Shown here one piece after another: positions 16,446 to 64,000 of a stretch of DNA of 64,000 nt (the stretch's first letter is position 1; every line of letters begins with the position of its first letter). The stretch is from positions 124,001 to 188,000 of the forward strand of contig NIVC01001500.1 of the NCBI GenBank assembly GCA_002269645.1. Direction: 5' to 3'. The position numbers and the translations under genes were made by a program. Below the pieces are notes generated by a model. It worked only from the letters and a program-made list of their open reading frames with translations. It made no database searches and was not told where the DNA came from. Origin of the DNA: Macrostomum lignano. Taxonomy: Eukaryota.

Positions 16446-17007
16446 CTCTACCTCTCACAGGCTACCCCTCCCAGACAGCCCCTCCAGGCTAACCCGACTA
16501 CCCCTCCCAGGCAGCCTTCCCGGGCTTCATCTCCCACTCAACCTCTTCCAGACAGCGCTCCCAGGCTACCCTTCCTGACTACTCTTGCCAGGCTACCCCT
16601 CTTACTCAACCCCTCTCAGGCTCCTCTCCCACTCTACCTCTCCCAGGCAGCGCTCCGAGACTACGCCTCGCAGGCAGCCCTTCCAGTCTAACCCTCCCAG
16701 GCAGCTCTTCCAGGCTACTCCTCCCAGGCTACCCCTTCCATGGCAACCACTTCCAGGCTATCTCCCACTGTGCCCTTGAGTACTGTCTCCATTTATGTTC
16801 AAAACTGAGAAGATTGTTTCGTTTTGGTATTATTTAAAAAGATAACACTATGCATCATTATTTACTTCAGACACTTCACTCTCACCATTTCAGGTGCGTA
16901 CATGCGAGTCGGCTTTCCAACGGGGAACTGTGCGTTTATGAAAGCCATTTGGGATTTGGGATGCCAGAAAAGATATTCAATTTTGCAAGGATCCGATAAA
17001 TGCTGCC

Positions 17008-21430: not shown

Positions 21431-22014
21431 GCAGCATTTATCGGATCCTTGCAAAATTGAATATCTTTTCTGGCATCCCAAATCCCAAATGGCTTTCATA
21501 AACGCACAGTTCCCCGTTGGAAAGCCGAATACAAAGTGCGGCGTCAGCGTTAGCTGACTCGCATGTACGCACCTGAAATGGTGAGAGTGAAGCGTCTGAA
21601 GTAAATAATGATGCATAGTGTTATCTTTTTAAATAATAACAAAACGAAACAATCTTCTCAGTTTTGAACATAAATGGAGACAGTACTCAAGGGCACAGTG
21701 GGAGATAGCCTGGAAGTGGTTGCCATGGAAGGGGTAGCCTGGGAGGAGTAGCCTGGAAGAGCTGCCTGGGAGGGTTAGACTGGAAGGGCTGCCTGCGAGG
21801 CGTAGTCTCGGAGCGCTGCCTGGGAGAGGTAGAGTGGGAGAGGAGCCTGAGAGGGGTTGAGTAAGAGGGGTAGCCTGGCAAGAGTAGTCAGGAAGGGTAG
21901 CCTGGGAGCGCTGTCTGGAAGAGGTTGAGTGGGAGATGAAGCCCAGGAAGGCTGCCTGGGAGGGGTAGTCGGGTTAGCCTGGAGGGGCTGTCTGGGAGGG
22001 GTAGCCTGTGAGAG

Positions 22015-23050
22015 GTAGAGTGGCAGGGTGTGGGGAATGCCGGCAGGGTGTGGGGAAGGCCGGCAGGGTGTGGGGAAGGGTAGCAAGGAGTAGGGAAGGC
22101 CAGCAGGGTATGGGGAAGGCCGGCAGGGTGTGGGGAAGGACAGCAGGGGTGGGGAATGCCAGCAGGGTGTGGGGAATGCCAGCAGGGAGTGGGGAAGGCC
22201 GGCAGGGTGTGGGGAATGCCAGCAGGGAGTGGGGAAGGCCTGCATTGATGGGGAAGGACAGCAGGGAGTGGGGAAGGCCTGCATTGATGGGGAAGGCCAG
22301 CAGGATGTGGGAAAGCCTCCAGGATATGGGGATAGCCGGCAGGGTGTGGGGAAGGGTAGCAGGAAATAGGGAAGGCCAGCAGGAGTAGGGAAGGCTGGCA
22401 GGGTGTGGGGAAGGACAGCAGGATGTGGGGAAGCTGGCAAGGTGTAGGGAAGGCCGGCAGGGTGTGGGGAATGCCGGCAGGGTGTCTGGAATGCCAGCAA
22501 GGAGTGGGGAAGGCCTGCATTGATGGGGAAGGACAGCAGGGTGTGGGGAAGGCCTGCATTGATGGGGAAGGACAGCAGGGTGTGGGGAAGGCCTGCATTG
22601 ATGGGGAAGGACAGCAGGGAGTGGGGAAGGCCTGCATTGATGGGGAAGGCCAGCAGGGTGTGGGAAAGCCTCCAGGATGTGGGGATGGCCGGCAGGGTAT
22701 GGGGAAGGGTAACGGGAAATAGGGAAGGCCAGCAGGAGTAGGGAAGGCTGGCAGGGTGTAGGGAAGAACAGCATAGTGTGGGGAAAGGTAGCAGGGAGTA
22801 GGGAAGGCCAGCAGGATGTGGGGAAGCTGGCAGGGTGTAGGGAAGGCCGGCAGGGTATGGGGAAGGGTAGCCAGAAATAGGGAAGGCCAGCAGGAAATAG
22901 GGAAGGCTGGCAGGGTGTGGGGAAGGACAGCAGAGTGGGGGAAAGACAGCAGGGTATAGGGAAGGACAGCAGGGTATGGGGAAGGACAGCAAGGTGTGGG
23001 GAAGGACAGCAGTGTGTAGGGAAGGCTAGTAGGATATGGGAAAAGCCAGC
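22015..23050. repeat. G-rich minisatellite, right foldback arm (inverted copy, ~1 kb)
   Basis: Reverse complement of the 14480-16445 array at about half the length. Confidence 0.95.
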
Positions 23051-24299
23051 AAGGTATGGCCATGTGGGAAGGCCAACAAGATACAATGAAGGCCAAGCAG
23101 GATATATTAAAGAGCAGCAAGGTTTGTGAAAGGCAGCAGGGTATAGAAAAGGCGCATAAAAGACAATGAAGGGCAGCAAGGTATAGGGAAGGCTTGTAGT
23201 TGTATTGATAAAAATAGGTAGCAAGTGTTGTAGGAAGGCCACCAGGGTAGGGTATGGTGAAGGGCAACAGGGTATAGCTATGTAGGGAAGGCTAGCAGGT
23301 TATAGATAGGGAAAGGGAAGGTTAAAAAAAACAAAAAAATATAGAACCTCAAAATACTAAATACTAATTTTAGGCTTAACCTATAATATAAAATAGTAGA
23401 ATAGAACCTAATTTATTATTAAAAAAAATAAAGAATACATGTATTCATGTATTCATTTATGGAATTTTATGCTAGCTCAGCTAGTTAAACTAGGTATATA
23501 TAATAGGCTATTAGTATAGTATATTAGAACCCTAAATTATGCCTGTTCAATATATCTATCAATATAGCTTTACTAAATAGTTTCTCTCCTAAACTCAGGA
23601 TTCAAGGTTCAGAAAAAAAGAATATATAGCTTTAGGCCTCGCTTAGTCATACAGTTATTGCATTCCATTACAAAATTATGCATAGGCCTAGCTACAAACT
23701 AAAACTGAGTGCCATCCAAGTTCACTTATTGAACTTTAAGTCGAGTCATATTGTTCTCCTGTTCTAATATTAATTTGCTAGGCCTATTAATATTGTGGAA
23801 ATAATAAACAGCTAGTAGGCCTACATAAAATAATGTTAAATGTTAACACTTGTAGTTGTAACTAAGTCATCCTGACCTAATATTTATCTAGCATTCTAGT
23901 GACACTAAAATTACTGTACTAGAGAATAGTAGGCTAGTAAAATCGCTAGGCCTACTTTGCATTAGTGAACTAAAAAATAAGCAGAAACGTCTGTTCAAAT
24001 TTGCGCCATATTGGGCCTTTGTGCGCATAAAAAAGGCAGTTTATATCATGCCACCATATCATATAGCATGATACGGACTGCCTTATAGGCGGTTTTTGCC
24101 ATGTTCTATACCGCCTAACGTGTATATATGGGTGGTCCAGAACCAGAACCAATTTGTAAAGTATAACTTTTTGTCTCCTTAACTAGAGGGATATACTTGC
24201 TATAAACTCGGCCAGGCCATTATGTATATTTATTCAAGATATTTGAACTTTGGGCAATACAAAAGTAGTTACAGCGAATAGAAATCAAATGCAGATTAA

Positions 24300-30971: not shown

Positions 30972-32435
30972 CTACTTCACTTTGTCGAGTTCGAAGCTTT
31001 CAGCAGCCTCCTGTCCGATCATGCCGGGCTCGATGAGCGCCGTCACTGCGGTGCGCGCGCTGGTATCGAGAACGGCGCTATTATAATCGACGTTGACTTC
31101 TTGGTCGGCAGCAATGCGCCTGACGACGCACTCGAAGTTGTCAGTTTCAACTCTGCGTCCGACGGCGACGGCGACGCCGCTTCTGCTGAAAGTTCCGCTG
31201 CCTGCGGCTTCGTTCCGAGCCCGACGACGGCAGCAGCAGCAGAGTCCGCTTGCCAGCGAGCGCAGGGCGGCGGCCAGCGATTTGCGGAACGAGGCGGACA
31301 CCAGGCAGTAGAAGATGAAGTTAATAGCGCAGCCAGTTACCTGGCTTAGCGTTGTCAGACTGGTCAGTCTCTGCAGTATATAATATGTTCGAATCGCTGC
31401 GAATTCGGAGCTCTTGAGGCGGCTGAGCAAAGTGTTGCTAATGTATCTCCTGCACAGCAGGTTGAGTATCTGGCCTGGACTGATTAGCACAAGGAACAGC
31501 AAGGTGACGGTCACCAATAACGGTGTCAGATTGTCTGTCTGCTGTACAGCTCCGGCACCGTTGCCTTGCAAACGCGTTGTAGCATCTTCTTGATTGCCAT
31601 TCTGGGCGTTCAGCTGGTTGCGCTGTCGCAGACTGGACCTGTAGGCCAGGATTAGGCGGATGTTGCAGACTACGATGCCGAGTAGAGGCAACGCGTTTAC
31701 TAGCAAAATAGTGGCCCAGTAGTAAATATAAGCGTGCCATTTCATGCCAGGGTCCAGCTCTTTCCTCCGGTTGAAAGTGTAGCACGAGTTACTATTAGTC
31801 GAGTTGTCTATTGTCGCTTCGTATTTAAAGAAATCAGGGAAATGCAACACAACAGCGGCGACAAAAACGATGCCAATTGAGACGCGCAGTTTTCTCCGGT
31901 TGAGCCAGTTGCGCGACTGCAGCGGCCGCCAGACAGCCAGGTAGCGGCAAATCGTAATTGTTAAAGTGAGCCACACGCTAGACGCCATGAAAATATTGGC
32001 GAAAGCCTGGCCAATAATCTGCGAATAAAGTAGACTCAAAGATGAGCATTGCGGTCTGGTCTTGCTGATCGGCAGCGAGCTCAAACAGATGCACAAATCC
32101 GACACGGCTAGGGCCATCAGCGACTGCGACATGGAGCTCTCCAGCCTTGCTGGTCGGCCTCCTAAACCATCTCCGCTAGCTACGCCGCCGCGCTGTCGTC
32201 GCTTGCAGGGCTTAGCGAAGGCTAAAACTGTGAGCAAGTTGCCAGCGATGCCCAGCAAGCAGACGGACCGGAGACCGATGCCCAGACAGATTGATTCGAA
32301 ATCACGGAAATTCCGTATGGCGGCGGCCACTTGTTTGACAAAATCGCTGCTGTCATTCTTGCCGCCTGACTCGAGCATTGCAGTTTTGGAGTGAAATCTG
32401 TGAATTAAAGGTGAGTTGGTATGGAGCTTGAGCAT
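30972..32435 (-). CDS. Intronless class A GPCR, FMRFamide/sex-peptide-receptor-like orphan peptide receptor
   Basis: Seven hydrophobic segments with GIAGN (TM1), LAVSD (TM2), SVWLT..ICRY.AV.RPL (TM3), HFPDFF (TM4), LP.L.IVVCN (TM5), FLVLISP (TM6) and AINFIFYC..SASFR (TM7). The frame is open to 32531; first in-frame ATGs are at 32435 and 32378. Confidence 0.93.
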   Translation of the reverse strand: MLKLHTNSPLIHRFHSKTAMLESGGKNDSSDFVKQVAAAIRNFRDFESICLGIGLRSVCLLGIAGNLLTVLAFAKPCKRRQRGGVASGDGLGGRPARLESSMSQSLMALAVSDLCICLSSLPISKTRPQCSSLSLLYSQIIGQAFANIFMASSVWLTLTITICRYLAVWRPLQSRNWLNRRKLRVSIGIVFVAAVVLHFPDFFKYEATIDNSTNSNSCYTFNRRKELDPGMKWHAYIYYWATILLVNALPLLGIVVCNIRLILAYRSSLRQRNQLNAQNGNQEDATTRLQGNGAGAVQQTDNLTPLLVTVTLLFLVLISPGQILNLLCRRYISNTLLSRLKSSEFAAIRTYYILQRLTSLTTLSQVTGCAINFIFYCLVSASFRKSLAAALRSLASGLCCCCRRRARNEAAGSGTFSRSGVAVAVGRRVETDNFECVVRRIAADQEVNVDYNSAVLDTSARTAVTALIEPGMIGQEAAESFELDKVK

Positions 32436-33504
32436 CTGGATTGATTTGTTTTTGAAGTTCAAATAGATGATTGTGTGGTGATTCCTAATGATTATGGTTG
32501 TGGTGACATTGCAGATGCTGGATATAAGCATTTAGTTCTTTATGGATAAATACTTGTACGCAGGCACAGCGGACTCATTTTTTCATTTTCACGCATTGTC
32601 AAGGACTCTTGTCAAATCGAAACCGCGCGGATTTAGACGCGTTAATTAATTAATCTTGAGCTGATGTTTGTCCAAAAATAGAAGCAAGCGCCTGGCATGT
32701 AGTTGTCCAAAGTCAATGCCAAACCAAGGCGCACTGAAAGCTGTCTTGAAATCTTTTAATCAAAAGGAAAGCGGATTTAGCAACAAACCGGGAACTGGGA
32801 CTGCAGCTGTAGAAGTCCTATTGATTAGTAAACCTTAAAGAGTCGACACTAGTTTATCTAGTTCAAAGTGGCGAAAAACCGATCTAAAATGGTACAATCT
32901 TGGCTGTACAATTCCGTTTTCAGTAAGCCAACAACAACAAAGTATTTTAAGTAAGAGATGCATCGGAATAACCTAATAGTTATGCAGTATTATGAACCAA
33001 CTGTGCGTTAAACGCAGTCACAAGTTAGTTTCGAGCGTAGTTTAAACACGAGTTTGAATCGTAAGACGTCCATGCAAAGTGTGACTTTAATATTTTATTT
33101 TATAATTTCATTTAATAATAAGGCTAGCGCAGACTCGTAACAAGGTTAAAAAACTACAGCAAATTATTGCTGTAGAACTTAATTAACTGTAATGACTTAC
33201 CAGCGTGCCTATAAGCAGTGAATGTGTTGTTTCGAAAGTTGGCGGTTTAACTTTATCCATTCAGCTTTACATGTTAGCAAAAACATATAGCTTATCTATA
33301 GTGCTCAGTTATTGGCTGTGCAGGAATTCTTGTTGGCTGATCTGTCAATCCAACCAATCACACATCGAAATAGGATTTGTCGTCTTGTTTGATTTTGTTG
33401 AAGCATTGAATCTATCTTTTCTAAGCATGTTCTATGAGAGTTCAGTTTGACAGTCTTATCAAACCAACGTCAGCCAACTTTAAAAAATTATTATATAAGC
33501 TTGC

Positions 33505-50500: not shown

Positions 50501-53500
50501 TTAGGGTTAGGGTTAGAAGGTTGACAGATATTTTTAGATTTCCAAGGCTTATTGGGGGCATGGCTGAGATGTCAAGGGGGGGAAGTTGATATGTTAAAGC
50601 TTGTGGGGGGGAATTACTGACATGTCAAGGCTTACAAGGTTTGATAGGAGATTTTTTAAGATTTCAAGGATACATGTAGCTTATTAAAAAAACGTGTATT
50701 GCATTTCTTTGGCTCCCCAACGGGGGGGCGTAGATTGCTAGTATGTATCTAACAATCAGGATACAATTCTCTTATCGACAAGATTGTTCGATTTTTCTTT
50801 ATAGTGACACGTTGAATCAAGGAACAAGCATAACTGAAGCCCCAATCTTACACTGATTTCCTTATCCACCAGCTAATTGCCGTCTCTAAACCAACTTGCG
50901 CCGAGGAATTTTACGATTTACTCGAACGAACTCTGCTAGCCGAAGAGGCCGCCGCTGATTCTGAGGGCAGCGCTAGGCAAAAGCTGGCCACTATGCTGGC
51001 TGAACTGCGTGCCCGAACTGTTAGCACCGACGGTGCGTTTCACTGGTGCTCTACAATTGAGAGAAATAAGGGGGTCGGGTAAAGCGGGCTGACGGACGAC
51101 TAGAATGAAAAAGGAGAGGGTTGATGTAGAGTGGGGTGGCTGGAGAGAACTCGGGGTCGGGTAAGACAGGCTGCGATAGCCAATTAAAATGAACTGAAAA
51201 GGGGTTGATGTGGAGTGGGGTGGCTGGAGAGAACTCGGGGTCGGGTAAGACAGGCTGCGATAGCCAATTAAAATGAACTGAAAAGGGGTTGATGTGGAGT
51301 GGGGTGGCTGGAGAGAACTCGGAGTCGGGTAAGACAGGCTGCGATAGCCAATTAAAATGAACTGAAAAGGGGTTGATGTGGAGTGGGGTGGCTGGAGAAA
51401 AATCGAGGGTCGGGTAAGACAGGCTGACTTGGCCAATTAGAATGAAGTGAAAAGGGGTTGATGTGGAGTGGGGTGGCTGGAGAGAAGTCGGGGGTCGGGT
51501 AAGACTTGGCCAATTAGAATGAAGTGAAAAGGGGTTGATGTGGAGTGGGGTGGCTGGAGAAAAATCGAGGGTCGGGTAAGACAGGCTGCCATGGTCAATT
51601 AGAATGAAGTGAAAAGGGGTTGATGTGGAGTGGGGTGGCTGGAGAAAAATCGAGGGTCGGGTAAGACAGGCTGCCATGGTCAATTAGAATGAAGTGAAAA
51701 GGGGTTGATGTGGAGTGGGGTGGCTGGAGAAAAATCGGGGGTCCGGTAAGACAGGCTGCGATGGCCAATTAGAATGAACTGAAAAGGGGTTGATGTGGAG
51801 TGGATTAGCTGAAGAAATATCGGGGGTAGGATAAGGCAGTCCGCAGATGGGCCAATTAAGCAAATTAAGCTAATAAAATCATTAATTTTTCAGAAGCGGC
51901 GAGCGAGATTGCACGCAAGGGGCGCGTGAAGTCAAGCCTACGTAAGCAAGTTCATATTGTTATTTTGGTACCGTTTTTTACAGCTGATTGTTGATTCCGT
52001 ATACTCGTACAAGATCTATCATAAGAAATGAATGATATGATGTACACCCATAGCCCATTGTTAACAACCGTACCGCAGGCAACGATCCATACAGGCTGTC
52101 AACCACCGAGTTAGTCCGCCTGCACACGCTGGTGTCGAAGCTGTGGCAGCACCTGACCAGCTGGGCGGAGTTCCAGCGTGCCGGTTCAGACTGCGCCTGC
52201 TGTTGCTGCTGCTGCGGCTGCGGCAGTCCAGAGGAACTGTGCTGCTGCTCAGCCACAGAAACTAGAAAAGTCGGCACTGCCTTAAACTGGCGCGCGAACG
52301 GCGACTTGGAGTCCGAGTGAGATCAAACTATCACTATCAAATCAGAAGTACGGTATATAATATTAGTAGTATCATTGGTATATCATATCAGTAGTATACC
52401 ATATCATTAGTAAATGATATCAGTAGTATCTCATTAGTAGTATGCCATATCAGTAGTATACCATATCATTAGTATATCAAATCAGCATAGTTATAATGTA
52501 TCTCGATTCGTAACTCGCCAATTAAAACTCAGACTTCTACAATGCAGCAGCGAACGTCTCGAGCTGCTGCAACGCAGCCTCAAATCCGCAGCCAAAGCTC
52601 CGTCAGACGATTACGATACCACTGAACGATAGTCCTCGCTGAGGTCTCCATGACAACCACAGCTAAACTTGGCCACCTGGATTTGAAACCAGCCGAGCCG
52701 AAGCCGTCTGTGGACTTTGTCGTCAGCGGCGTTGTCGTCGGAGCCTCGACAGTGGCGACAGCAAATGCTTTAGTTAAGACGAGTGCAGTGATGCAGCCAC
52801 AACCACCGCCGCCACCACCACAGCCGCAGCAGTCAATGCGGCAGCCGCCAGTCCTCAGACACCAGGCGGCGCAGACAACCGCTCCTGTCGGTCTCCGTCA
52901 GTCCGAGGTTCGAGCCCGGCCGCCGAGCCTCTCCGAGGCGAGCCAAACGATGCTAACGGCTAAAACCCCCACCGCCAGCGTGTTGGTTGTCGCAACGAAG
53001 CATTTAGAGTCCGTTGCTGATCAGGCTAGCGACACACTCGATCTGACTCGTTGGAGACGGCAGGATCGCGACGAGCGTCGCGTCGACTCGTCGATGCGCT
53101 ACCAACCCGACATAGTCGAGACCAGGTGCGCAGCGGCCGGAAAGCTGCTTACAGTTGATCAGTTCGTTGACAGTCCGCTGGCGGATTTGCGTATCGAAGG
53201 GCTTTCCGACAGCGGCGTTCAATGTCGCCTGGCACTTGAAGACGCTAGTGATATTTCTGTGCAGATTGGACCGCAGTTCGACTGCGCCAGTGCGCAGACT
53301 TCGCCACCTGAAGCTGCCCACGACAGCGTGAACACAGGCATCACTAGCAAGGACATAGCGGTCTGGGCGGGCGCAGAGAGTTTCAGTCGCGGGAGCAGAC
53401 TTGTCCGGAGCCGGCTATAGGTCACGTGATCTGCGCTCCAGCCACCGCGATTGCCGGCGTGCGGACGCATCTTTACTTTGCGTTTGAATTCGGTGTTCAA

Positions 53501-56500
53501 ACAGGAGCCAGCGCTTTTGAATCGGTCGATTATGGTCAGCAGGTTGGGTGCAGCGCGTTCGACAAGACGAATCAAGGTCAGCAGGTTGGGTGCAGTGCGT
53601 TCCACACCACGGATCAAGGTCATCAATCTGGAGCAAGCGCATTCAACAACACGGATCAAGGTCATCAATCTGGAGCAAGCGCATTCCACACCACGGATCA
53701 AGGTCATCAGTCCGGAGCAAGCGCGTTCCACACCACGGATCAAGGTCATCAGTCCGGAGCAAGTGCGTTCCACACCACGGATCAAGGTCATCAATCTGGA
53801 GCAAGTGCGTTCCACAACACAGATCAAGGTCATCAATCTGGAGCAAGCGCATTCCACACCACGGATCAAGGTCATCAGTCCGGAGCAAGCGCGTTCCACA
53901 CCACGGATCAAGGTCATCAGTCCGGAGCAAGTGCGTTCCAAAACACAGATCAAGGTCATCAATCTGGAGCAAGCGCGTTCCACAACACAGATCAAGGTCA
54001 TCAATCTGGAGCAAGCGCATTCCAGAACACGGATCAAGGTCATCAATCTGGAGCAAGCGCATTCCACAACACGGATCAAGGTCATCAATCTGGAGCAAGC
54101 GCATTCGAGAACACGGATCAAGGTCATCAGTCCGGAGCAAGCGCGTTCCACACCACGGATCAAGGTCATCAATCTGGAGCAAGCGCATTCCAGAACACGG
54201 ATCAAGGTCATCAATCTGGAGCAAGCGCATTCCACACCACGGATCAAGGTCATCAGTCCGGAGCAAGCGCGTTCCACACCACGGATCAAGGTCATCAGTC
54301 CGGAGCAAGTGCGTTCCAAAACACAGATCAAGGTCATCAATCTGGAGCAAGTGCGTTCCACAACACAGATCAAGGTCATCAATCTGGAGCAAGTGCGTTC
54401 CACAACACGGATCAAGGTCATCAATCTGGAGCAAGCGCATTCCACAACACGGATCAAGGTCATCAATCTGGAGCAAGCGCATTCGAGAACACGGATCAAG
54501 GTCATCAATCTGGAGCAAGCGCGTTCCACAACACGGATCAAAGTCATCAATCTGGAGCGAGCGCATTCCACACCACGGATCAAGGTCATCAGTCCGGAGC
54601 AAGCGCATTCCACGGTGTGAATTTCTGCCAACAAGCAGGGGCCAGCGACTTTGATCGGCTGGACGAATGCGAGCAGTCTGGTAACAGTTACTTCGACCGG
54701 CTGGATGCAGAGTCATGCGCCGGGATCAGTGCATGGGATAGTGTTGATGGTCAGGCGAACGCGCAGTCTCTATTAACAGACACAGCTAGCTGCTACGATG
54801 TTGGAGTTCAGAATGTTGCCATTGAGGCTATCTGCGGGACTAATGAGGCTGTGACTCAGATGGGCTGCAGCAGCTTCTCATTTAATCAGACAGGGTGTCA
54901 GATTGGACCCGGCTACTTCGACTTAACTCATACTGAATGCCAAGCTGGATGCAGTATTTTCGACAAAGCAAATAGTGAGTGCCAGGCTGGTTACAGCTAC
55001 TTTAACAGAACGGAGAGCGACTGTCAGACCGGTTGCAGCTACTTTGACAGAACGGAGAGCGACTCTCAAACCGGTTGCAGCTACTTTGACAGAACGGAGA
55101 GTGACTGTCAGACCGGTTACAGCTACTTTGACAGAACGGAGAGCGACTGTCAGACCGGTTACAGCTACTTTGACAGAACGGAGAGTGACTGTCAGACCGG
55201 ATACAGCTACTTTGACAGAACGGAGAGCGACTGTCAGACCGGTTACAGCTACTTTGACAGAACGGAGAGTGACTGTCAGACCGGATACAGCTACTTTGAC
55301 AGAACGGAGAGCGACTGTCAGACCGGTTACAGCTACTTTGACAGAGCGGAGAGCGACTCTCAGACCGGTTACAGCTACTTTGACAGAGTGGAGAGCGACT
55401 GTCAAGTTGGCTGTAGTCAATTTCAGTTCAAGGAGCAGCTTATTTCAAGCGAGTGGAGCGAGTCATTGGCAAAACGGCAGCGCCCACCATCGCCTGTGTC
55501 AGCTTTAGCCTCCTTGTGCGTGCACCCGGTGCTAGCGGATACTGCTGCCCACTGGGTCACCAATTCCAGTGACGCATCATCCGAGACCGTACAGACTGTG
55601 CAGACTGATTCAGCCATTGCCAAACTGCCAGAACTGAGCCACACAGGCAGTCAGCACTTGCAGGTTGTACTTACTGACATGGCAATCCAGACGGACGCAC
55701 CAGAAGCACTAACGGAGATAAAAAATGTTGCCGAGACTTACAGCAGCCAAATTCAAACTGATGGCAGTCTGTTTAGCCGCCTCAATGCCGAGGTTCAAGC
55801 TGGTTGCAGTGGCTTCCTGCTCAGCGATGCAATCGTTTCGGTGGGTACAAATGCTTTCACGGACTTCAGTCAGGCAAACGTGTGCTCAAATTCAATTGCG
55901 TTAGTTGAGACCGGTAGTCTGCATAAGGTTCTTAGTGAGCCGCAATCTGTCTCAGCCAAAATAGACACCTGCGAGGAGGTCGTCAGAGCCTGCGGAAGCG
56001 TTGATATTGAGATGATAAATTCAAACTGCCAGACTGGCAAAGCAGACAGTCGGGAACTAACTGACTCAGCCGTTCCCAGCGAATGGAGCACCTTACATTG
56101 GAGCAAGTATTCAGACAACTCCGTCCTGATTCGTCCAGCGACTGACGAAGTTCTGGCTCTATGCTTTGGACAAACTGCCGAAGCAATTGCTCGTACGCAG
56201 AGACTTTCAAGTGACAGTTCCGCCGTGGCAAGAGTTGCCGCAGTGGCTCACACAGGTAGCATGCACTTGGTGACACCTTTAAAAGAATTCGGAACGCAAA
56301 CGGATCAGGAGGTTATTATTGAGAAAAGACAACCCACTCAGAGCCTTAAAATCAGTTATTTGGATGGCAGCGAACAAACTGACTCGAGGTTTTTCACACG
56401 CGAAATCGAGTTATCGGCTGGTGTGAGCTGTTGGAGCTTCGCTGAAGATGCTGTCAGAGCGAACAGTCGGCTCCAGCTAGCCGAGACAGGAAGCATTCAC

Positions 56501-59150
56501 GATGTCCCATCTCAGCAGCAGTACGTCTCGGTCAACATGGACCCGGTGTTGGATTCGAAACGGGTCGAATGTCAGGTCGACGCAGTTTGTCAATCCGGCT
56601 GCAGCTTCTTCTTTGATAGACAAGAGGCTGAAAATCAGATGGGGTCTGGTACCTTTGAGATAATTAATAGTGAATGTCAGGCCGGTAGCGGAGGCTTGAA
56701 TTCAGAAGATTTCGAATGCCAAGCTGGTTGCAGCTTCTTCCTGGGTAGAGAAAATGTCGAATGCCAGGCTGGCTGCAGCCATTCAGAATTCGAGAACTTC
56801 GAATGCCAGTCTGGATGCAGCTTTTTCTTTGACAGAGAGGACAACGAATGTCAGGCTGGTCGCAGCTGGTCTGACTTCTCAGACTCCGCTATTCTCGGCG
56901 AGTGGAGTTTCACGCGATCCAACAGCAGCGTCGCTGAGGTTGTTGCGCGTCCTCCAGGCAAAGCTGAAGAGACAGTCAACACCAGAGCAGAGATTCAACC
57001 GGGTACATTCGATTTCGTTGTTGCTAGGCTGCCTAATTTGAATCAGACAGGCAGTCAACACCTTGGAATTAATGTGAAGGAGTGCGAGACGCAGACACTG
57101 GACATTGAGGAACCTGAGCAGTTTATCATTACCGAAAGACTTCATGCAAGCCGCGAACCCAGCCTGAAATATTCGGACAGTTGCAATCAGACCGACCACA
57201 CTCAGTTAGGACACTGCGAGACGGGATCGTCAGCCGGTGTGAGTACGTGGAGTTTCAGCCAGGCGAGTGTCAATGCGAGTTCAAGTTTGAAGTTATCAAA
57301 TACTGGAAGTATTTACGAACTATCGTCTGAGCAGCGGTGCGTCTCGGTCAAGCTAGATGCTGATAGTGAGCCCATCAAAGTTGTTGCTAAGCAGACAAGG
57401 CATGCCGACAGTCAAGTTGATAATGAGCTTCTGCCCACGACCGATGCCGTATGTCAGGCTGGGACCACTTTGTCGTCTGAAGCTGTCCAGCAAGCTGTAT
57501 CAAGCTCGTGGCATCAACCAGACTCTCTCCTTGGCCACGTGAAGTCGCAGCCAATGAAAACTACGGACACTGGTTCGCTCTGGGCTGTGGACGCTGTGCA
57601 AAGCGAGATGCGCACCTCAACAGGTCCAGAATGCTGCGAAGTGGAGTCGCAGACTCACACAGAGACCGCCGTAGCCAGCGTGAAAGCCTGTCTAGATGCG
57701 CTCTCAAATTCGGACATTGAGATTAGCAGCCGAGAGTGCCAGACCGACCCAGAGGTGGTGGTCCCTTCTGTTCGGCTCGATAAGCCGCTGTCCCGCTCGA
57801 TCGCTTGTCGCGACACGGTGTCGCTCTACCGGCCTTTAGACGCGACGGCGCTCGGCGACGACTCCGGCTCCTACTTCACTTACCACCCGGAGCACCCGGA
57901 ACGGATGCGATTCGACGAGCCGTGCCAGCGCGCGCACTACATCCAGACAGATGGCATCCGGATTCATGACGGCCCGATGGTGGACACCGGCTGCGGGCAT
58001 CGGGACGACTTACCGAGTGAGCCTGTTGTTTTATTTAATTGTGCACCATGCTACTATTAGTACGATGTTTTTAGTTCTAATAATTTTAGCCGAAAACTTG
58101 GCTACTGGATTCGATTTGCTGTTTGATGTCTGCGCAAAATAAGGCTTTTTATGGTACGTATTCGAGGTTCAGTATCGGGCTCCAAGTGCCGAACAAAGTT
58201 TCTGTCTCTTCTCAGCTTTCTCGTGTCTGCCATCTAATTTCCTCTCTCGCCTCTTTTCTCTTTTTTCATATATCATCTCATCTTTCCTCTTCTGGAAAGT
58301 AAGGTCATAATGCACACATTCTGCATTCCCAGGCTTGGCGGAGGCTTCAACTGACACCGCTTCGGCGTCAGCCGCCGCCGCGTTGTCCTTGTCGCTGTCT
58401 CTGTCGCCGACCGTAGTGTCCAGCCCTTTCCTTGTTGGCTCCGCCGACGCTGGGTCCAGCGGGCTGCGCAGCCCCGCTGCCATGTTCCGCTGGCGCAGTC
58501 GCAACCAGAGCGCCAGCTCGCATCAGCCGACTGCGCTAACATCGACGTCTAGCGATAGAGACAACGAGGGGGAAGAAGCGGCGGCGAAGCAGGCGGCTGA
58601 GGAGGCACGCATGGTTGCCGAGCTGACCAAAGTGACGCGTCTGGTGCCAGACCTGAAAGGCCGCGACATTCCAGCCGTGCGACTCGGACCACCGATGCCC
58701 ACCGGTGTCGAACACCGCGACATCGCGACACCGACGACGACGACGACGTCTGCTTTGACAAAGGCAACGACAACGGCGACAACAAAGACCATGACGACAG
58801 CGACTGCGTCAATTTCGATAGCGGCGACGTCCGGTTTGCCGATAGTGTCAACGTTGCCGGAAGCGGTATGGACTACTTCAACGACTTCGGCTACTGCTAT
58901 GGCGTCGGCTATTTCAACGACGTCGGCTACTTCAACGACGTCGGCTACTTCAACGACGTCGGCTACTTCAACGACGTTTGCTACTGCTATGACGTCAGCT
59001 ACTTCAACGGCTACATCTACTGGCCCTGTCGTTGACGACGCGGACTCTGTCTTCCAGCGAGCGAAGGCGAAGTCTCTTTCCAGACAGCGCCAGCGTCAGC
59101 TTCAGGAAGCCGCGGCGGCCGCTGCTGCCGATGAGGCGACCAAGCAGTGA
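35066..59150 (+). CDS. Multi-exon gene: partial plakin domain (spectrin repeats plus SH3) fused to a giant Q-x-G/TQT repeat region and a Thr-rich tail, ~2600 aa
   Basis: Phase-consistent GT-AG exons: 35066-35227, 36065-36178, 37957-38280, 38686-38853, 39513-39667, 39902-40010, 50873-51032, 51894-51941, 52079-52316, 52548-58016 (two apparent 1-bp deletions, near 52625 and 53386) and 58333-59150. Additional 5' exons cannot be excluded. Confidence 0.75.
36430..37895. repeat. 14-bp minisatellite in two inverted blocks (C/T-rich 36430-36760; G/A-rich 37340-37895) in one intron
   Basis: The unit tccctgcccctctc is on the left and its reverse complement gagaggggcaggga on the right. Confidence 0.93.
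37957..40010 (+). CDS. Exons encoding plakin-family spectrin repeats and the embedded SH3 domain
   Basis: QRCWQWLDQLSVLLRLHSRNAADYNSFHVEC resembles plectin/desmoplakin [39 protein letters not shown] resembles the plakin LVxKAKxIVQL motif. LRGICACLYETPE|FVVAQGQELTILDNSDRLQWRV...GNEVTLPSITVWIPP matches the plakin SH3 pattern (LCDY...KGDECxLxDNSxRxKWKV...GNEAxVPSVCFLIPP). Confidence 0.85.
38295..38635. repeat. (TAAC)n microsatellite filling most of a 405-bp intron
   Basis: About 80 units, directly visible between exons ending at 38280 and starting at 38686. Confidence 0.97.
40082..40690 (+). mobile_element. Non-autonomous Helitron-like element (full plus partial tandem copy)
   Basis: A|TCTAAATATACTAAAT start followed by a TTTG/GCTT microsatellite. 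The internal block (taacgctctagagat...ttaaatattcgaaaaac) recurs at ~40528 and is shared with the element at 45542. Confidence 0.6.
41005..41095 (+). mobile_element. tRNA-like head of a second SINE family (A box and B box)
   Basis: GGCGGAGTAGCCGCAGTG ... AAGGTTCGAGTCTGCCTCC. The box spacing is too long and no cloverleaf was evident, so this is not a true tRNA. Confidence 0.5.
41690..42200 (-). pseudogene. Decayed 3' end of a CR1/L2-group LINE ORF2
   Basis: Minus-strand remnants LDTACLL..LTCGRNNLV*QLQ (resembling LEYACxVW..LT..QS..LE.LQ) and NAYPQRHRIVPLAK...RRNPLNNL. Confidence 0.35.
42590..45010. repeat. 30-bp satellite (aaggcttactgggggaattgctgagatgtc): degenerate 42590-44150, homogeneous 44150-45010
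   Basis: Directly visible. Degenerate copies reappear at 49700-50700. Confidence 0.93.
45542..46000 (+). mobile_element. Non-autonomous Helitron-like element abutting the 3' end of another
   Basis: cccc-agag-gggg hairpin, then CTAG (45538-45541), directly followed by TCCTATATACTAAAAATGAG and (TTTG)n. The internal sequence matches the 40082 element. Confidence 0.65.
46140..49650. repeat. 22/23-bp AT-rich satellite (aaaaaatcatagaagcgtcatgt), ~3.5 kb, with higher-order structure
   Basis: About 150 monomers. A rare PstI variant occurs at 46667, 47051, 47549, 47932 and 48974. Confidence 0.97.
51070..51835. repeat. 84/85-bp intronic tandem repeat, ~9 copies
   Basis: ggggtcgggtaagacaggctgc...ggggttgatgtggagtggggtggctggagag fills intron 51033-51893. 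Confidence 0.95.
52548..58016 (+). CDS. Giant exon: ~1820-aa low-complexity region with 14-aa Q-x-G-x-S-x-F repeats and TQT-like motifs
   Basis: One frame is open for over 4.6 kb (53426-58060), including ~2.6 kb of non-repetitive sequence where the other frames are closed. It has 24 copies of (H/Q/E)(T/N)TDQGHQSGASAF and ~10 copies of DRTESDCQTGYSYF. The donor A|GTGAGC at 58017 is in phase with the next exon. Confidence 0.85.
58333..59150 (+). CDS. Terminal exon of the plakin-like gene, Ala/Ser/Thr-rich with a basic C-terminal helix
   Basis: Acceptor ttcccAG at 58331-58332. The phase-1 junction gives S-L-A-E-A in frame with the 271-aa ORF. TGA at 59148-59150. Confidence 0.7.
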
Positions 59151-61670: not shown

Positions 61671-62103
61671 ACCAGTGACGACCACTTGTAGCCTTTTAAC
61701 TACCAGAACACTATGGTTGCATATTTTTGTTTTTGAAATTGATTTGAAATTTCTTTTAGCTGTTAGAGATAAACCACACACAGTCTTGATAACGACCTCA
61801 ATCAAGGGAGAGAACGTGTGGAGAGCTTAAGATTGTCTGAGTCTGAGATAAGGGACACCCGAGCTCTGTGGCCTGATCCAAGTGCTGTCACCTTTGAACC
61901 AATTGACTCAACAGAATGATTGAGCAGCCTTTCAGCGACTAGAAAACTATCTATATTAACCCGAGCCTTGCACTGGTTCTGCTCAGGATTCAACTCACCC
62001 GAGGTTGGCTGTTGTCTCTTCTCTGAAATACTTTTCAACCTGTTTATTAATTGATTTTATCGATCTTGCCTTCAGCTTGACATCCAACAAGACTCGTTTA
62101 AGA

Positions 62104-64000
62104 ATGCCGCCGATCAAATTGGCCATAGTAACACTCTTGTTGCTGCTGCCGAGTCTTGTTGTCAGCTCGCCAACAGAGAAGGCAACTAAAAAACAGCCGA
62201 ACATCCTCATATTGCTGGTGGACGACTTGGGTTTCGGCGACATCGGTGAGTCCTTCTGGTTTGTAGGCCGTTCTAAAAGAAAAAAATAATTAATTTAATT
62301 TAATTTTCATTTCTCAATTCTTGAATGCTTTAAATTTATTCTAAGATAGTTTAACGTCTTGCCAGTGGCATGTCAGGCCGGCGCACTTTAAGCGACATAT
62401 TTGTCACACAGCTGGCAAGAAGCATTGCTGCCCGCATTCCGCCGACTCCCCTGAGCAGTCACACAAGCGCGCAGATACGTATGCAGTCACACGCACAGGC
62501 ACACACTCACACAGGAGTGTACAGCGGCCCTAACTTTATTGATCGTAAGGCATGTACACTTCACTGTGCCTTGGGGGTTGGCCCTCAAGCTGGGCGTTAA
62601 TTGCACGAGCAGAGCCAAGCCGAGATTCCAATGTAGCCCCAAATTAATGTGACTGCACTTGGAATCGAGCCTGGGCCGCTGGCACATCAGAGCCTGCGCT
62701 AGACCGCTGGGCTACGGCCCCGCTTAGCAGTATATATATACATGTATGTAAATGACATACTGACTAAACATTCACTGCTTTGTTAATATATAGATAACGA
62801 TTCGTGTTATCTATATATGCGGGTTACGAACGTACAGCCTCCCTGATTCGAATATTATTTTAGCTTTGGTTGCAAAACAGTTCAATGCTTTATCCTAATT
62901 TACTAAAATTTCCTTCTAACTTCACAGGCGCCAACGGCAATACCACAATTCGAACGCCGAATGTTGACAGAATCGCCAAGGAGGGCGTCCGGCTGTCGCA
63001 CCACCTGACAGCCGCGCCAGTTTGTACGCCGAGTCGGTCGGCACTGCTGACGGGAAAATATCCATTAGGATGGGCATGGTGCCCAGCATCCAGATGCAGG
63101 TGTTCCCGTTCACGGCTAGCCAAGCCGGTTTACCAACTAATGAGACCACTTTTGCCAAGGTGGCTCAGCGGTCTGGCTACCGCACCGGACTGATTGGTGA
63201 GCGATCGACCGGTCTTCATGCATTTTTTGTTGTACATTTTAATTATTGGATTTGGAGATTGTGCTGTGGGGACTTGTTTTGCGTGCTGAGTTTGAGGGAT
63301 TTTTTCGCGGTGGTGGGTGTGAGGGGTTGTTTCGGGGTGCTGGGCGTGAGGGGTTGTTTTAGGGTGGTGGGTGTGGGGGTTGTTTTGGGGTGCTGGATGT
63401 GAGGGATTGTTTTGTGGTGGTGGGTGTGAGGGGTTGTTTTGGGGTGCTGGGCGTGAGGGGTTGTTTAGGGTGGTGGATGTGAAGGGTTGTTTTGGGGTGC
63501 TGGATGTGAGGGGTTGTTTTGGGGTGCTGGATGTGAGGGGTTGTTTCGGGGTGCTGGACGTGAGGGTTTGTTTTGTGGTGGTGGGTGTGAGGGGTTGTTT
63601 TGGGGTGCTGGGCGTGATGGGTTGTTTTGGTGTGGTGGGTGTGAGGGGCTTATCTTGGGGTGCTGGACGTGAGGGGTTGTTTTAGGGTGGTGGATATGAA
63701 GGGTTGTTTTGGGGTGCTGGGCGTGATGGGTTGTTTTGGGGTGGTGGGTGTGAGGGGCTTGTCTTGGGGTGTTGGGTGTGAGGGGCTTGTCTTGGGTGGT
63801 GGGTGTGAGGGGCTTGTCTTGGGGTGGTGGGTGTGAGGGACATGTATGCACTGTATGCCCGATCCGCCACTATTGCGCAACTACACCACCAGGAAAGTGG
63901 CATTTGGGCGCCCACTGCAGCAACAGCAAAGACTTCTGCCACCATCCGAACAACCACGGCTTCGACTATTTCTACGGCTGCCTGCTGACTCTGTTGAAAG
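62104..64000 (+). CDS. STS: Steryl-sulfatase/arylsulfatase (STS/ARSD/ARSE-type), 5' part, running off the window
   Basis: Exons 62104-62245, 62928-63196 and 63893 onward. Signal peptide, then [32 protein letters not shown], the catalytic CTPSR (63023-63037) [18 protein letters not shown], and [15 protein letters not shown]....[14 protein letters not shown], characteristic of the STS subfamily. One apparent 1-bp deletion at ~63063. The symbol denotes family, not proven orthology. Confidence 0.9.
62367..62721 (-). mobile_element. tRNA-derived SINE, copy 2 (sulfatase intron 1)
   Basis: Same family as 28372-28720. A box TAGCCCAGCGG, B box GGCTCGATTCC. Confidence 0.85.
63290..63840. repeat. ~27-bp G/T-rich minisatellite in sulfatase intron 2
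   Basis: Unit ggggtgctgggcgtgaggggttgtttt. Confidence 0.93.

What the first reader, a model, noticed from the sequence alone, without database searches (positions are those of the whole stretch)
52650..58016. Candidate extreme multivalent LC8 (dynein light chain) binding array
Seen: many TQT-like motifs, including KEFGTQTD, KECETQTLD, TDMAIQTD, YSSQIQTD, VQTVQTD, SRECQTD, EVESQTH, HYIQTD, EFGVQTG, DSGVQC, DISVQI and ~10 tandem ESDCQTG, plus about 40 related xQ(A/S/V)G units at 14-aa spacing. Established: LC8/DYNLL binds ~8-residue motifs anchored on T/I/V/C-Q-T, and multivalent partners such as ASCIZ/ATMIN and Nup159 carry about 5-11 sites in disordered regions. Inference: this exon could encode a polybivalent LC8 ladder with tens of sites that dimerises and stiffens the tail. 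The HQSG units are non-canonical and may not bind. An alternative reading is a beta-solenoid or RHIM-like (VQIG/QQVG/CQIG) amyloid-forming repeat.
Basis: partly seen in the sequence, partly recalled or inferred. Interest (0 to 1): 0.75.

Follow-up and report, generated by a model that had tools for sequence, protein, structure and literature searches.

The report
Repeat-built orphan protein with few LC8-type sites

Summary
The motifs and the 14-residue periodicity are real and far above chance. However, the interval is not one reading frame. ORF A (52650-53420) and the long ORF B (open 53348-58060) are in different frames, and the join is unresolved.

ORF B has three arrays of a Q-x-G-x-S-x-F 14-mer: 29, 14 and 7 units. 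They are interleaved with four diverged copies of a roughly 165-215 aa super-repeat. Each super-repeat keeps one [I/T/C]-Q-T site in the same alignment column. These sites score like validated LC8 binders on a matrix built from the 79 binders and 32 non-binders of Jespersen 2019. The tandem units score below the tenth percentile of binders (CQTG 3.1 at best, HQSG -3.5).

AlphaFold2 gives no fold for the tail (pLDDT 34). For array 2 it gives a low-confidence period-14 beta meander (pLDDT 50-63).

The tail has no detectable homologue. Array 2 resembles 14-mer arrays in a Lottia protein and in a large uncharacterised metagenomic family that also reads TQTG, which shows that TQT periodicity can arise without LC8.

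Verdict: a plausible moderate-valency LC8 client. The "tens of sites" ladder is unsupported but not excluded, given the KANK1 precedent. Nothing was tested experimentally.

The parts
52650..53420 (+). ORF A, 256 aa, ATG to TAG. It is a Pro/Gln/Ser-rich N-terminal piece in a different frame from the rest. It holds SDSGVQCR (53205-53228), SDISVQIG (53247-53270) and a hydrophobic stretch VVSGVVVGASTVATANALV (aa 24-42).
   Evidence: LC8 matrix scores are 8.3 and 9.2. Kyte-Doolittle 19-residue mean is 1.74, so a membrane or signal anchor is possible. No Pfam family matched.
53348..53420 (+). Overlap in which both frames are open: frame B opens at 53348 and frame A stops at 53418-53420. A one-base indel or a short intron would have to lie here to join ORF A to ORF B. 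This is unresolved.
53498..54715 (+). Array 1: 29 units of 14 aa. Twenty-four are nearly identical S-A-F-[HQEN]-[TN]-T-D-Q-G-H-Q-S-G-A. The rest are edge units reading QTG, QVG, QAG or QSG.
   Evidence: Variation among units is mostly synonymous. The unit scores -3.5 on the LC8 matrix. His makes up 10% and Cys 1% of residues.
54857..55444 (+). Array 2: 14 units with core Q-T-G-[YC]-S-Y-F-D-R-T-E-S-D-[CS]. This includes the ten ESD[CS]Q[TV]G units.
   Evidence: LC8 matrix scores are -1.4 strict and 3.1 lenient. AlphaFold2 gives 9-residue strands (QTGYSYFDR) and 5-residue turns (TESDC) at pLDDT 50-63. It is the only part with database matches. Cys is 8.2% and aromatics 17.9%.
55427..56065 (+). 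Super-repeat copy 1. It holds SEWS, TVQTVQTD (55586-55609), HTGSQHL (from 55643), TDMAIQTD (55673-55696), YSSQIQTD (55739-55762) and ETGSLH...VSAKID.
   Evidence: Alignment A1. Scores are 15.6 and 13.7. AlphaFold2 with A1 gives pLDDT 34 and no secondary structure apart from one 9-residue helix.
56066..56557 (+). Super-repeat copy 2. It holds SEWS, HTGSMHL, KEFGTQTD (56282-56305), GSEQTD, AGVSCWSF and ETGSIH...VSVNMD.
   Evidence: (score 13.5).
56558..56875 (+). Array 3: 7 degenerate units of 14-15 aa, [EN]-C-Q-[ASM]-G-[CS]-S-F-F. Cys is 10.4%.
   Evidence: The units have Ala, Ser or Met at +1 and score about 0 or below on the LC8 matrix.
56876..57460 (+). Super-repeat copy 3. It holds GEWS, QTGSQHL, KECETQTL (57077-57100), SCNQTD, AGVSTWSF and NTGSIY...VSVKLD.
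   Evidence: (score 9.8).
57461..58016 (+). Super-repeat copy 4, the most diverged. It holds DTGSLW, EVESQTH, SSRECQTD (57725-57748) and RAHYIQTD (57929-57952). It ends at a putative donor GA|GTGAGC; the ORF itself continues to the stop at 58058-58060.
   Evidence: SSRECQTD scores 12.7 when Cys(-1) is scored as Ser. It resembles the CQT octamers LC8Pred lists as likely human binders, such as DNAI1 RDRECQTE and NHS RDSECQTE.

Best explanation
This is a real, lineage-restricted protein-coding exon of an animal gene. The product is modular. Three arrays of a 14-residue unit (core Q-x-G-x-S-x-F, with His or Cys before the Gln) alternate with four diverged copies of a roughly 165-215 residue, apparently unstructured super-repeat.

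Most likely mechanism, which is inferred and not shown: each super-repeat offers one conserved [I/T/C]-Q-T-[D/L] octamer, and the protein adds two or three further IQTD/VQTD sites. This gives about 4-7 LC8/DYNLL docking strands. LC8 dimers would then pair two chains in register, as in ASCIZ, Chica or Nup159.

The long tandem arrays are probably not LC8 rungs. Their conserved positions (Q, G, S and an aromatic residue, at period 14) fit a beta-prone self-associating or structural repeat, with the Q-T-G triplet as part of the repeat core.

Shown: the coding frame, the repeat architecture, the motif enrichment, paralogue conservation of the Q-T column, and matrix scores against published binders.

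Inferred: disorder, LC8 binding, valency and the role of the arrays.
For: Coding evidence. The 2.6-kb tail has 0 stops in frame B against 30-51 in the other frames. Variation in array 1 is biased to synonymous sites.

Architecture.

Enrichment. [TIVC]QT occurs 9 times against 0.86 expected. Octamers scoring 7 or more on the LC8 matrix occur 9 times against 0.86 in 3000 shuffles, none of which reached 9.

Site quality. Three sites score 13.5-15.6, against a binder median of 13.9. At 13.5 or above there are 45/79 binders and 4/32 non-binders. SSRECQTD scores 12.7 under lenient scoring and resembles LC8Pred-listed CQT octamers.

Conservation. Q and T are invariant in the site column across four paralogous copies that share 18-33% identity with the first copy. 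A TGS[QM]HL motif sits exactly 15 residues upstream in three of the copies.

Site spacing. In copy 1 the sites are 22-29 residues apart (Q726, Q755, Q777), similar to ATMIN, Chica and RSP3 spacings in Table S4.

No fold. AlphaFold2 predicts no structure over copy 1 (pLDDT 34, pTM 0.12).

Arrays are not canonical sites. Scores range from -3.5 to 3.1. His(-1), Ser(+1) and Ala(+1) do not occur among the 79 binders.

Arrays tend towards beta structure..

The TQTG 14-mer pattern occurs in 49 metagenomic cluster representatives that look prokaryotic or phage-like from their domain content, so an LC8 partner is not expected there. In Lottia V4CMT4 the Gln of the homologous-looking unit is often Leu or Lys.
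Against: No binding data exist, and no AlphaFold-multimer run with LC8 was possible.

About 40% of TQT-bearing peptides tested by Jespersen et al. bound (29 of 72), so individual sites may fail.

Disorder is not established. The charge-hydropathy values of super-repeat copies 1-3 fall on the folded side of the Uversky line and copy 4 sits on it. Low pLDDT is also expected for any orphan sequence with a four-row alignment.

ORF A has a possible membrane or signal anchor, and arrays 2 and 3 have 8-10% Cys. If the repeats are extracellular or lumenal, cytosolic LC8 could not reach them.

No orthologue was found, so motif conservation across species is untested.

The second QTD of each super-repeat has I, E or N at -1, so what is conserved there is QTD, not an LC8 anchor. 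This hints that QT[DG] may be a repeat relic.

My matrix is a re-implementation, not LC8Pred itself. Its background frequencies come from my own approximate knowledge.
Confidence: 0.4

Rival explanations
1. The CQTG and HQSG 14-mers are themselves LC8 sites, weak singly and cooperative in register. The protein would then form a ladder of tens of LC8 dimers, a rod well over 100 nm long.
For: The perfect 14-residue period corresponds to an 8-residue motif plus a 6-residue linker. This is close to the 3-5 residue linkers of KANK1 and Nup159.

KANK1 is reported to bind at least 15 LC8 dimers through non-canonical anchors (TST, TNT, IGC, VNT, VMA) that do not bind as isolated peptides.

LC8Pred lists human CQT octamers and xQTG octamers as likely binders, and RSVSTQTG and VSRSTQTG are validated.

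The Lottia unit TDNDCQTG has Asp at -4.
Against: Unit scores range from -3.5 to 3.1, below the binders' tenth percentile of 6.0 and the non-binder median of 7.4.

His at -1 with Ser at +1, as in the 24 HQSG units, has no precedent among the 79 binder octamers. Even the KANK1 anchors named in the text I read (TST, TNT, IGC, VNT, VMA, VGE) all have T, I or V at -1.

Array 2 is 18% aromatic and is predicted, weakly, to pair with itself as a beta meander.

In the Lottia unit, Q is often replaced by L or K.

The same TQTG periodicity exists in the metagenomic, prokaryote- or phage-like proteins.

The near-identity of units at DNA level suggests recent expansion rather than a long-maintained ladder.
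Confidence: 0.08
2. No LC8 role at all. The protein is a structural or extracellular repeat protein. The 14-mers form beta-rich (meander, solenoid or cross-beta) or metal- or disulfide-linked assemblies, using Cys or His at the position before Gln. The tail's QTD/QTG/TGS triplets are decayed copies of the same repeat core.
For: The beta-meander prediction.

Cys and His alternate at the same unit position, and arrays 2 and 3 are 8-10% Cys.

ORF A has a possible signal or membrane anchor.

xTGS, xQTG and xQTD look like variants of one core, and the second QTD of each super-repeat has non-anchor residues (E, N) at -1.

Six of the 14 unit positions are shared with the metagenomic TQTG-x-[AS]-R-I family.

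From my own knowledge, Q-x-G cores and Gln ladders are typical of curli repeats, and STQT of bacterial ice-nucleation repeats.
Against: pLDDT never exceeds 63, and only one of five models shows the meander.

There is no Pfam match to Curlin_rpt, Ice_nucleation, RHIM or HET-s at E <= 1, and no PDB relative.

The residues that follow the tail's QT sites (D-x-P-E) differ from the array's G-x-S-x-F. The -1 residue at the conserved column is I, T, T, C, exactly the LC8-permitted set.

The link between ORF A and ORF B is unproven, and the hydrophobic stretch is weak (rich in Gly, Ala, Ser and Thr).
Confidence: 0.3
3. The arrays are sticker-and-spacer low-complexity domains. Evenly spaced aromatic residues sit in polar Q/H/N/S/G/T/D spacers and drive condensation, possibly in a pH-sensitive way through His. 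The TQT-like triplets are incidental.
For: Array 1 has one Phe every 14 residues, with 66% disorder-promoting and 10% order-promoting residues and 10% His. Arrays 1-3 all fall on the disordered side of the charge-hydropathy line.

There is no confident fold.

From my own knowledge, uniform aromatic spacing is a hallmark of phase-separating prion-like domains.
Against: This does not explain the invariant Q and G, or the conservation of the Q-T column and TGSxH motifs in the tail. The net negative charge and few Arg residues in array 1 give weak sticker chemistry.
Confidence: 0.15
4. Not a functional gene. It could be a decaying or mis-assembled repeat locus whose long ORF is kept open by recent repeat amplification.
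For: There is a frame break between ORF A and ORF B with no good intron. No identical product is on record, and the tail has no homologue in very large collections. The locus is flanked by satellites.
Against: The 2.6 kb of non-repetitive sequence has 0 stops in one frame against 30-51 in the others. Variation among units is biased to synonymous sites. Short motifs are conserved at protein level among super-repeats of about 30% identity.
Confidence: 0.05

Closest known systems
ASCIZ/ATMIN, Chica (FAM83D), RSP3: multivalent LC8 clients with canonical TQT sites
   Same: Several [T/I/V]-Q-T octamers lie 20-35 residues apart in a Ser/Thr/Gln/acidic-rich region with no predicted fold. The best sites score in the range of validated binders.
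   Different: No zinc fingers or other recognisable domain and no sequence homology. The sites sit in a four-fold internal super-repeat, each paired with a TGSxHL motif 15 residues upstream. Binding is untested.
KANK1 L2 linker and Nup159 DID: tightly spaced LC8 ladders that form rods
   Same: The arrays are regular and short-period. The 14-residue period is compatible with the 3-5 residue linkers described for KANK1 and Nup159. The KANK1 sites are individually weak and non-canonical.
   Different: The KANK1 anchors named in the text I read all have T, I or V at -1. Here -1 is His or Cys, and +1 is often Ser or Ala. The units are aromatic-rich and near-identical. There are no KN motif, coiled coil or ankyrin repeats in the window. 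The valency would be three times the KANK1 record.
Uncharacterised metagenomic 14-residue repeat family (x-T-T-T-[RQK]-T-Q-T-G-[VK]-[AS]-R-I-x; P0001, P0002, P0003, P0006 and others)
   Same: It has the same 14-residue period and invariant Q and G. Thr at -5, Thr at +1, Ser/Ala at +4 and a hydrophobic residue at +6 are shared. phmmer E-values go down to 1e-26, and the match depends on residue order within the unit.
   Different: The metagenomic units are basic and beta-branched, whereas the window's are acidic and aromatic. Those proteins carry ConA-like lectin, DUF2341 or phage-type N-terminal parts. Repeat E-values are inflated and the targets were selected by this same query, so convergence cannot be excluded. 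No structure is known.
Lottia gigantea hypothetical protein V4CMT4 (LOTGIDRAFT_171212)
   Same: It has 14-residue units T-[DE]-N-D-C-[QLK]-T-G, 36-39% identical to array 2 over 110-144 residues. It also has LTGSVH and DAGSLW motifs that recall the window's TGSxH and DTGSLW.
   Different: Gln is replaced by Leu or Lys in about half the units. The residues after Gly differ (PVQP or SVPPS instead of x-S-x-F). There is no detectable similarity outside the array and no canonical TQT[DE] site. Homology is plausible but unproven.
RHIM ([I/V]-Q-[I/V/L/C]-G amyloid motif of RIPK1/3, ZBP1, TRIF)
   Same: Q-x-G tetrads occur, and there is one exact VQIG (ORF A aa 204-207).
   Different: RHIM proteins carry one or a few motifs of about 18 residues with hydrophobic flanks, next to signalling domains. 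Here about 50 tandem units mostly have H, C or Q at the first position, and there is no Pfam RHIM match.

Membership tests
Multivalent LC8/DYNLL client | Two or more 8-residue motifs anchored on [T/I/V/S]-Q-[T/V/C/I] | tested here: met
   Tail sites are AIQTD, QIQTD, GTQTD, ETQTL, VQTD, YIQTD and ECQTD. The count is 9 against 0.86 by chance.
Multivalent LC8/DYNLL client | Flanking residues compatible with binding, meaning a score within the range of validated binders | tested here: met
   Met for 3-5 tail sites, which score 9.8-15.6, with SSRECQTD at 12.7 under lenient scoring. The matrix is my re-implementation of Table S4 data, not LC8Pred itself.
Multivalent LC8/DYNLL client | The same criterion applied to the roughly 50 tandem 14-mers, the 'extreme array' | tested here: not met
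   TESDCQTG scores -1.4 strict and 3.1 lenient, TDQGHQSG -3.5, and CQAG/CQVG units 0.4 or below. The binders' tenth percentile is 6.0. His(-1), Ser(+1) and Ala(+1) are absent from the 79 binders.
Multivalent LC8/DYNLL client | Motifs lie in an intrinsically disordered region | tested here: inconclusive
   AlphaFold2 gives pLDDT 34 and no structure for super-repeat 1. However, the alignment had only four paralogous rows, and the charge-hydropathy values are borderline.
Multivalent LC8/DYNLL client | Cytosolic or nuclear exposure of the motifs | tested here: inconclusive
   ORF A has a hydrophobic stretch (KD19 1.74) and arrays 2 and 3 are 8-10% Cys. The join between ORF A and ORF B is unresolved.
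Multivalent LC8/DYNLL client | Evolutionary conservation of the motifs | tested here: inconclusive
   Q and T are invariant across the four paralogous super-repeats. No orthologue was found in which to test conservation between species.
Multivalent LC8/DYNLL client | Direct binding to the LC8 dimer, with stoichiometry | not testable with these tools
   This needs ITC, pull-down or SEC-MALS, or AlphaFold-multimer with LC8. An LC8 sequence could not be submitted to the structure tool.
RHIM amyloid motif | [I/V]-Q-[I/V/L/C]-G core within a motif of about 18 residues that the family profile recognises | tested here: not met
   Only one VQIG is present, in ORF A. The array tetrads read HQSG, CQTG, CQAG and QQVG. 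There is no Pfam RHIM hit at E <= 1.
Beta-solenoid or beta-rich repeat proteins (curli, ice-nucleation and antifreeze type) | Tandem units that fold into a regular stacked beta structure, or a match to a family profile | tested here: inconclusive
   AlphaFold2 gives a period-14 beta meander, not a solenoid, at pLDDT 50-63 in one of five models. There are no Pfam matches and no PDB matches.
Metagenomic TQTG 14-mer repeat family | Period 14 with invariant Q and G, plus T(-5), T(+1), S/A(+4) and hydrophobic(+6) | tested here: met
   Unit profiles are compared. Scores are 77-122 bits against about 0-10 for queries with permuted units. The targets were selected by this query, so the control is biased.
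Metagenomic TQTG 14-mer repeat family | Common descent, shown by shared non-repeat domains or context | tested here: not met
   No similarity exists outside the array. The flanking domains differ.

The most novel reading that the evidence does not exclude
The CQTG and perhaps the HQSG 14-mers are a new class of weak LC8 (or LC8/Tctex-family) docking units. They would act only cooperatively, giving a ladder of 20-50 LC8 dimers on paired chains. At the roughly 3.5 nm per rung implied for KANK1 (53 nm for 15 rungs), this would be a rod of about 70-175 nm, several times the largest valency reported. A variant of this reading is that the TGS[QM]HL motif, 15 residues before each conserved TQT, is a second light-chain site, echoing the adjacent Tctex and LC8 sites of the dynein intermediate chain.
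Probability: 0.07. Interest if true: 0.8.

Novelty: new member of a known kind. Interest (0 to 1): 0.35.

Why it matters
If the tail sites bind LC8, this would be a new multivalent LC8 client built by internal duplication. One docking site is kept per duplicated module, which would show how valency can evolve by repeat expansion. It would also provide a natural series of IQT, TQT and CQT anchors for testing motif rules.

If instead the arrays prove to be the binding units, the known limit of LC8 valency (about 15, in KANK1) and the accepted anchor chemistry would both need revision.

The negative lesson also has value. TQT or TQTG periodicity appears in a large metagenomic, prokaryote- or phage-like repeat family, so counting TQT-like triplets in tandem repeats is not evidence of LC8 binding on its own.

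Tried and rejected
- Pfam scan of both ORFs returned only sub-threshold noise (HrpE, IFN-gamma).
- Word-indexed homology searches of the tail found nothing, either as a single sequence or as a profile of the four super-repeats.
- A full phmmer search against 1.84 billion representatives hit only array 2. The hits are a mix of unrelated 14-residue tandem repeats (a fish TRIM-like protein, insect and other junk repeats), plus the metagenomic TQTG family and Lottia V4CMT4.
- A metagenome contig scan with the tail found nothing.
- Exact-product look-ups for ORF A, ORF B, the GPCR ORF and the PHD ORF found nothing on record, so the source organism stays unidentified.
- The GPCR search at E <= 1e-10 found nothing.
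- Rfam found no matches in the window.
- PDB sequence searches with array 2 and with P0002 found nothing.
- The intron search to join ORF A and ORF B gave many GT...AG pairs, none convincing.
- The permuted-unit control for the metagenomic similarity is order-specific but biased by target selection, so I do not use it as proof of homology.
- My first matrix penalised Cys at -1 by -5.3 only because Cys is rare. I corrected this after finding CQT octamers in LC8Pred's human list.
- I considered reading KANK1's SVCETGSNTEE as a TGS anchor matching the window's ETGS motifs. I rejected this because the anchor there is more likely SNT, and the peptide did not bind.
- KANK homology is rejected: the window has no ankyrin or KN features.
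- I did not run a fold search on the models, because a pLDDT of 34-45 would give meaningless matches.


Full report
**What is in the sequence**

The window is from an animal genome rich in satellites. It contains a rhodopsin-type GPCR ORF, sulfatase exons and a PHD-finger ORF, and GC content swings between 31% and 58%.

The flagged interval holds two ORFs in different frames:
- ORF A, 52650-53420, 256 aa, running from ATG to TAG.
- ORF B, open from 53348 to the stop at 58058-58060; 1544 codons are counted from 53426.

I could not find a convincing intron to join A and B. The join may be a one-base assembly error, a weak 62-nt intron or a different first exon.

Frame B is clearly coding:
- Its 2.6-kb non-repetitive part has no stop, against 30-51 stops in each of the other five frames.
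- In the 24 near-identical units of array 1, 7 of 10 variable nucleotide sites are third codon positions. Pairwise codon differences are 640 synonymous against 296 non-synonymous.

**Architecture**

Anchoring on Q-x-G shows three arrays of a 14-residue unit:
- Array 1: aa 25-430, 29 units, of which 24 read SAF[HQEN][TN]TDQGHQSGA.
- Array 2: aa 478-673, 14 units, with core QTG[YC]SYFDRTESD[CS].
- Array 3: aa 1045-1150, 7 degenerate units of the type ECQAGCSFF.

The unit consensus has invariant Q and G, Ser at +4 in 94% of units, Phe at +6 in 96%, Thr at -5 in 71%, and His or Cys at -1.

Between and after the arrays lie four diverged copies of a roughly 165-215 residue super-repeat. Identity to the first copy is 33%, 31% and 18% (alignment A1). 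Each copy carries short conserved islands:
- (S/G)EWS.
- L-x-[HQ]-TGS-[QM]-HL, followed exactly 15 residues later by [I/T]-Q-T-[D/L].
- A second QTD.
- AGVSxWSF.
- L-x-L-x-[EN]-TGS-[IL]-[HY]...VS[AV][KN][ILM]D.

**Is it more than chance?**

Yes. In the 863-residue tail:

| Pattern | Observed | Expected from 20,000 shuffles |
|---|---|---|
| [TIVC]QT | 9 | 0.86 |
| xQTD | 8 | 0.25 |
| TGSx[HYW] | 7 | 0.02 |

No shuffle reached any observed value.

**Scoring against real LC8 data**

I took the 79 binder and 32 anchor-bearing non-binder octamers of Jespersen et al. 2019 (PMC6607443, Table S4) and built a log-odds matrix. The background composition of disordered proteins comes from my own approximate knowledge.

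Calibration:
- Binders, leave-one-out: median 13.9, tenth percentile 6.0.
- Non-binders: median 7.4.
- At 13.5 or above: 45/79 binders and 4/32 non-binders.

Scores for the window's octamers:

| Octamer | Score |
|---|---|
| TDMAIQTD | 15.6 |
| YSSQIQTD | 13.7 |
| KEFGTQTD | 13.5 |
| KECETQTL | 9.8 |
| SDISVQIG (ORF A) | 9.2 |
| SDSGVQCR (ORF A) | 8.3 |
| RAHYIQTD | 7.1 |
| TESDCQTG (array 2 unit) | -1.4 |
| TDQGHQSG (array 1 unit) | -3.5 |

My first matrix over-penalised Cys at -1. LC8Pred's own scan of the human proteome lists CQT octamers as likely binders: DNAI1 RDRECQTE, CTTNBP2 RSVACQTD, NHS RDSECQTE and NHSL1 RDSSCQTE. When Cys is scored like Ser at -1, SSRECQTD rises to 12.7, level with those four (12.7-14.3). 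TESDCQTG reaches only 3.1, because Glu(-4), Ser(-3), Asp(-2) and Gly(+2) are all mildly unfavourable.

His(-1), Ser(+1) and Ala(+1) never occur among the 79 binders. The paper states that a charged or oversized residue in the anchor abolishes binding.

The four best-placed sites (AIQTD, GTQTD, ETQTL, ECQTD) occupy one alignment column of the four super-repeats, and Q and T are invariant there.

**Structure**

AlphaFold2 on array 2 as a single sequence gave mean pLDDT 44.8. Over the perfect repeats it gave 50-63, as a regular meander of 9-residue strands (QTGYSYFDR) and 5-residue turns (TESDC). Only one of the five models showed this.

AlphaFold2 on super-repeat 1, using the four paralogous rows as the alignment, gave pLDDT 34, pTM 0.12 and no structure beyond one short helix.

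So nothing buries the tail motifs, but low confidence is also what any orphan sequence would give. On simple composition, the arrays fall on the disordered side of the charge-hydropathy line, while super-repeat copies 1-3 fall slightly on the folded side and copy 4 sits on the line. Arrays 2 and 3 are 8-10% Cys and 12-18% aromatic. Array 1 is 10% His. ORF A has a weak hydrophobic stretch (KD19 1.74) that could be a signal or membrane anchor. If it is one, and if ORF A belongs to the same protein, the repeats could be extracytosolic and out of reach of LC8.

**Relatives**

The tail has none:
- Word-indexed search with a single sequence.
- Word-indexed search with the super-repeat profile.
- Metagenome scan.
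- Full phmmer search of 1.84 billion representatives, where every one of the 137 hits aligns only to array 2.

Many of those hits are unrelated 14-residue tandem repeats. Two groups are worth noting.

Group (a): 49 representatives, typically about 500-2400 aa, are metagenomic. Some have ConA-like lectin, DUF2341 or phage-type parts. They carry long arrays of x-T-T-T-[RQK]-T-Q-T-G-[VK]-[AS]-R-I-x and share six of 14 positions with the window's unit. They have no Pfam family and no PDB relative. A permuted-unit control shows the match is order-specific. However, the targets were chosen by this same query, so the result does not prove homology.

Group (b): Lottia gigantea V4CMT4 has T-[DE]-N-D-C-[QLK]-T-G 14-mers that are 36-39% identical to array 2. 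It also has LTGSVH and DAGSLW motifs. There the Gln is often Leu or Lys, so what is conserved is D-C-x-T-G rather than an LC8 anchor.

Both observations show that a TQT-like periodic core can be a property of the repeat itself.

**Literature context**

LC8 binds 8-10 residue strands. Position 0 is usually Gln, and non-TQT sites are rarer and weaker (PMC12057147).

Multivalent clients include ATMIN (10 sites in Table S4), dASCIZ, Chica, RSP3 and Nup159. A 2026 preprint reports that KANK1 binds at least 15 LC8 dimers cooperatively, through individually non-binding, non-canonical sites with 3-4 residue linkers, forming a rod of about 53 nm (PMC12803091).

A 14-residue period is therefore sterically acceptable, and a poor matrix score cannot exclude cooperative binding. 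Still, the KANK1 anchors named in the text I read all have T, I or V at -1, unlike HQS and CQA here.

**Conclusion**

The tail looks like a moderate-valency LC8 client with about 4-7 sites, one conserved per super-repeat. This is my best explanation, at confidence 0.4.

The arrays that would make the ladder 'extreme' do not meet current motif rules. They more likely form a separate beta-prone, self-associating or low-complexity module. Rival confidences are 0.08 for the full ladder, 0.30 for a structural or extracellular protein with no LC8 role, 0.15 for a sticker-spacer domain and 0.05 for a non-functional locus.

RHIM membership is rejected. Everything about binding, disorder and localisation is inferred. 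The decisive experiments are listed separately.

Noticed in passing
Proteins P0001, P0002, P0003, P0006, P0007, P0009, P0010, P0013 and about 40 more (not in the window): A large uncharacterised family of metagenomic proteins, typically about 500-2400 aa, with long arrays of a 14-residue unit x-T-T-T-[RQK]-T-Q-T-G-[VK]-[AS]-R-I-x. Some members carry ConA-like lectin, DUF2341 or phrog_14065 parts. The family has no Pfam model and no PDB relative. Its fold could explain what a Q-T-G 14-mer does.
   Followed up: partly
window 14200-17520 and 20930-23250: A large inverted repeat built of satellite arrays. The inner arms 16151-16914 / 21552-22315 and 16909-17510 / 20927-21528 are 98-99% complementary, with about 3.4 kb between them. 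The long 'ORFs' here are artefacts of stop-free repeats.
   Followed up: partly
window 30972-32531 (-): A single-exon rhodopsin-family GPCR ORF of 519 aa (7tm_1 3.8e-20, with an Srw-like secondary match). It has no relative at E <= 1e-10 in the word-indexed search and no identical product on record. The source lineage therefore seems poorly represented in public protein sets.
   Followed up: partly
window 62005-63193 (+): Exons of a sulfatase gene, with the [10 protein letters not shown] and C-T-P-S-R active-site signatures (PF00884, 1.8e-9). This is a separate gene downstream, on the same strand as the finding.
   Followed up: partly
window 58335-59150 (+): A 271-aa Thr/Ser/Ala-rich ORF containing an 18-bp tandem repeat (58873-59009) and with no Pfam match. 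It could be a further exon of the same gene or a separate low-complexity gene.
   Followed up: no
window 51118-51858 and 59748 to about 61600: An 85-bp satellite (8.8 copies, 91% matches) lies just upstream of the gene, and a 24-bp satellite array just downstream. The gene therefore sits between tandem-repeat blocks.
   Followed up: no
window 9941-10624 (+): A 227-aa ATG ORF with a PHD/C1-like zinc finger at its N-terminus (sub-threshold Pfam matches). It is probably derived from a mobile element.
   Followed up: no
window 55910-55990, 56486-56560 and 57302-57380 (ORF B aa 825-850, 1017-1042, 1289-1314): A second conserved motif class, L-x-L-x-[EN]-TGS-[IL]-[HY]-x-[VL]-x-S-[EQ]-x-[QR]-x-V-S-[AV]-[KN]-[ILM]-D, occurs once per super-repeat and is preceded by AGVSxWSF. 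There is also an (S/G)EWS motif after each array. I know of no counterpart for either.
   Followed up: no
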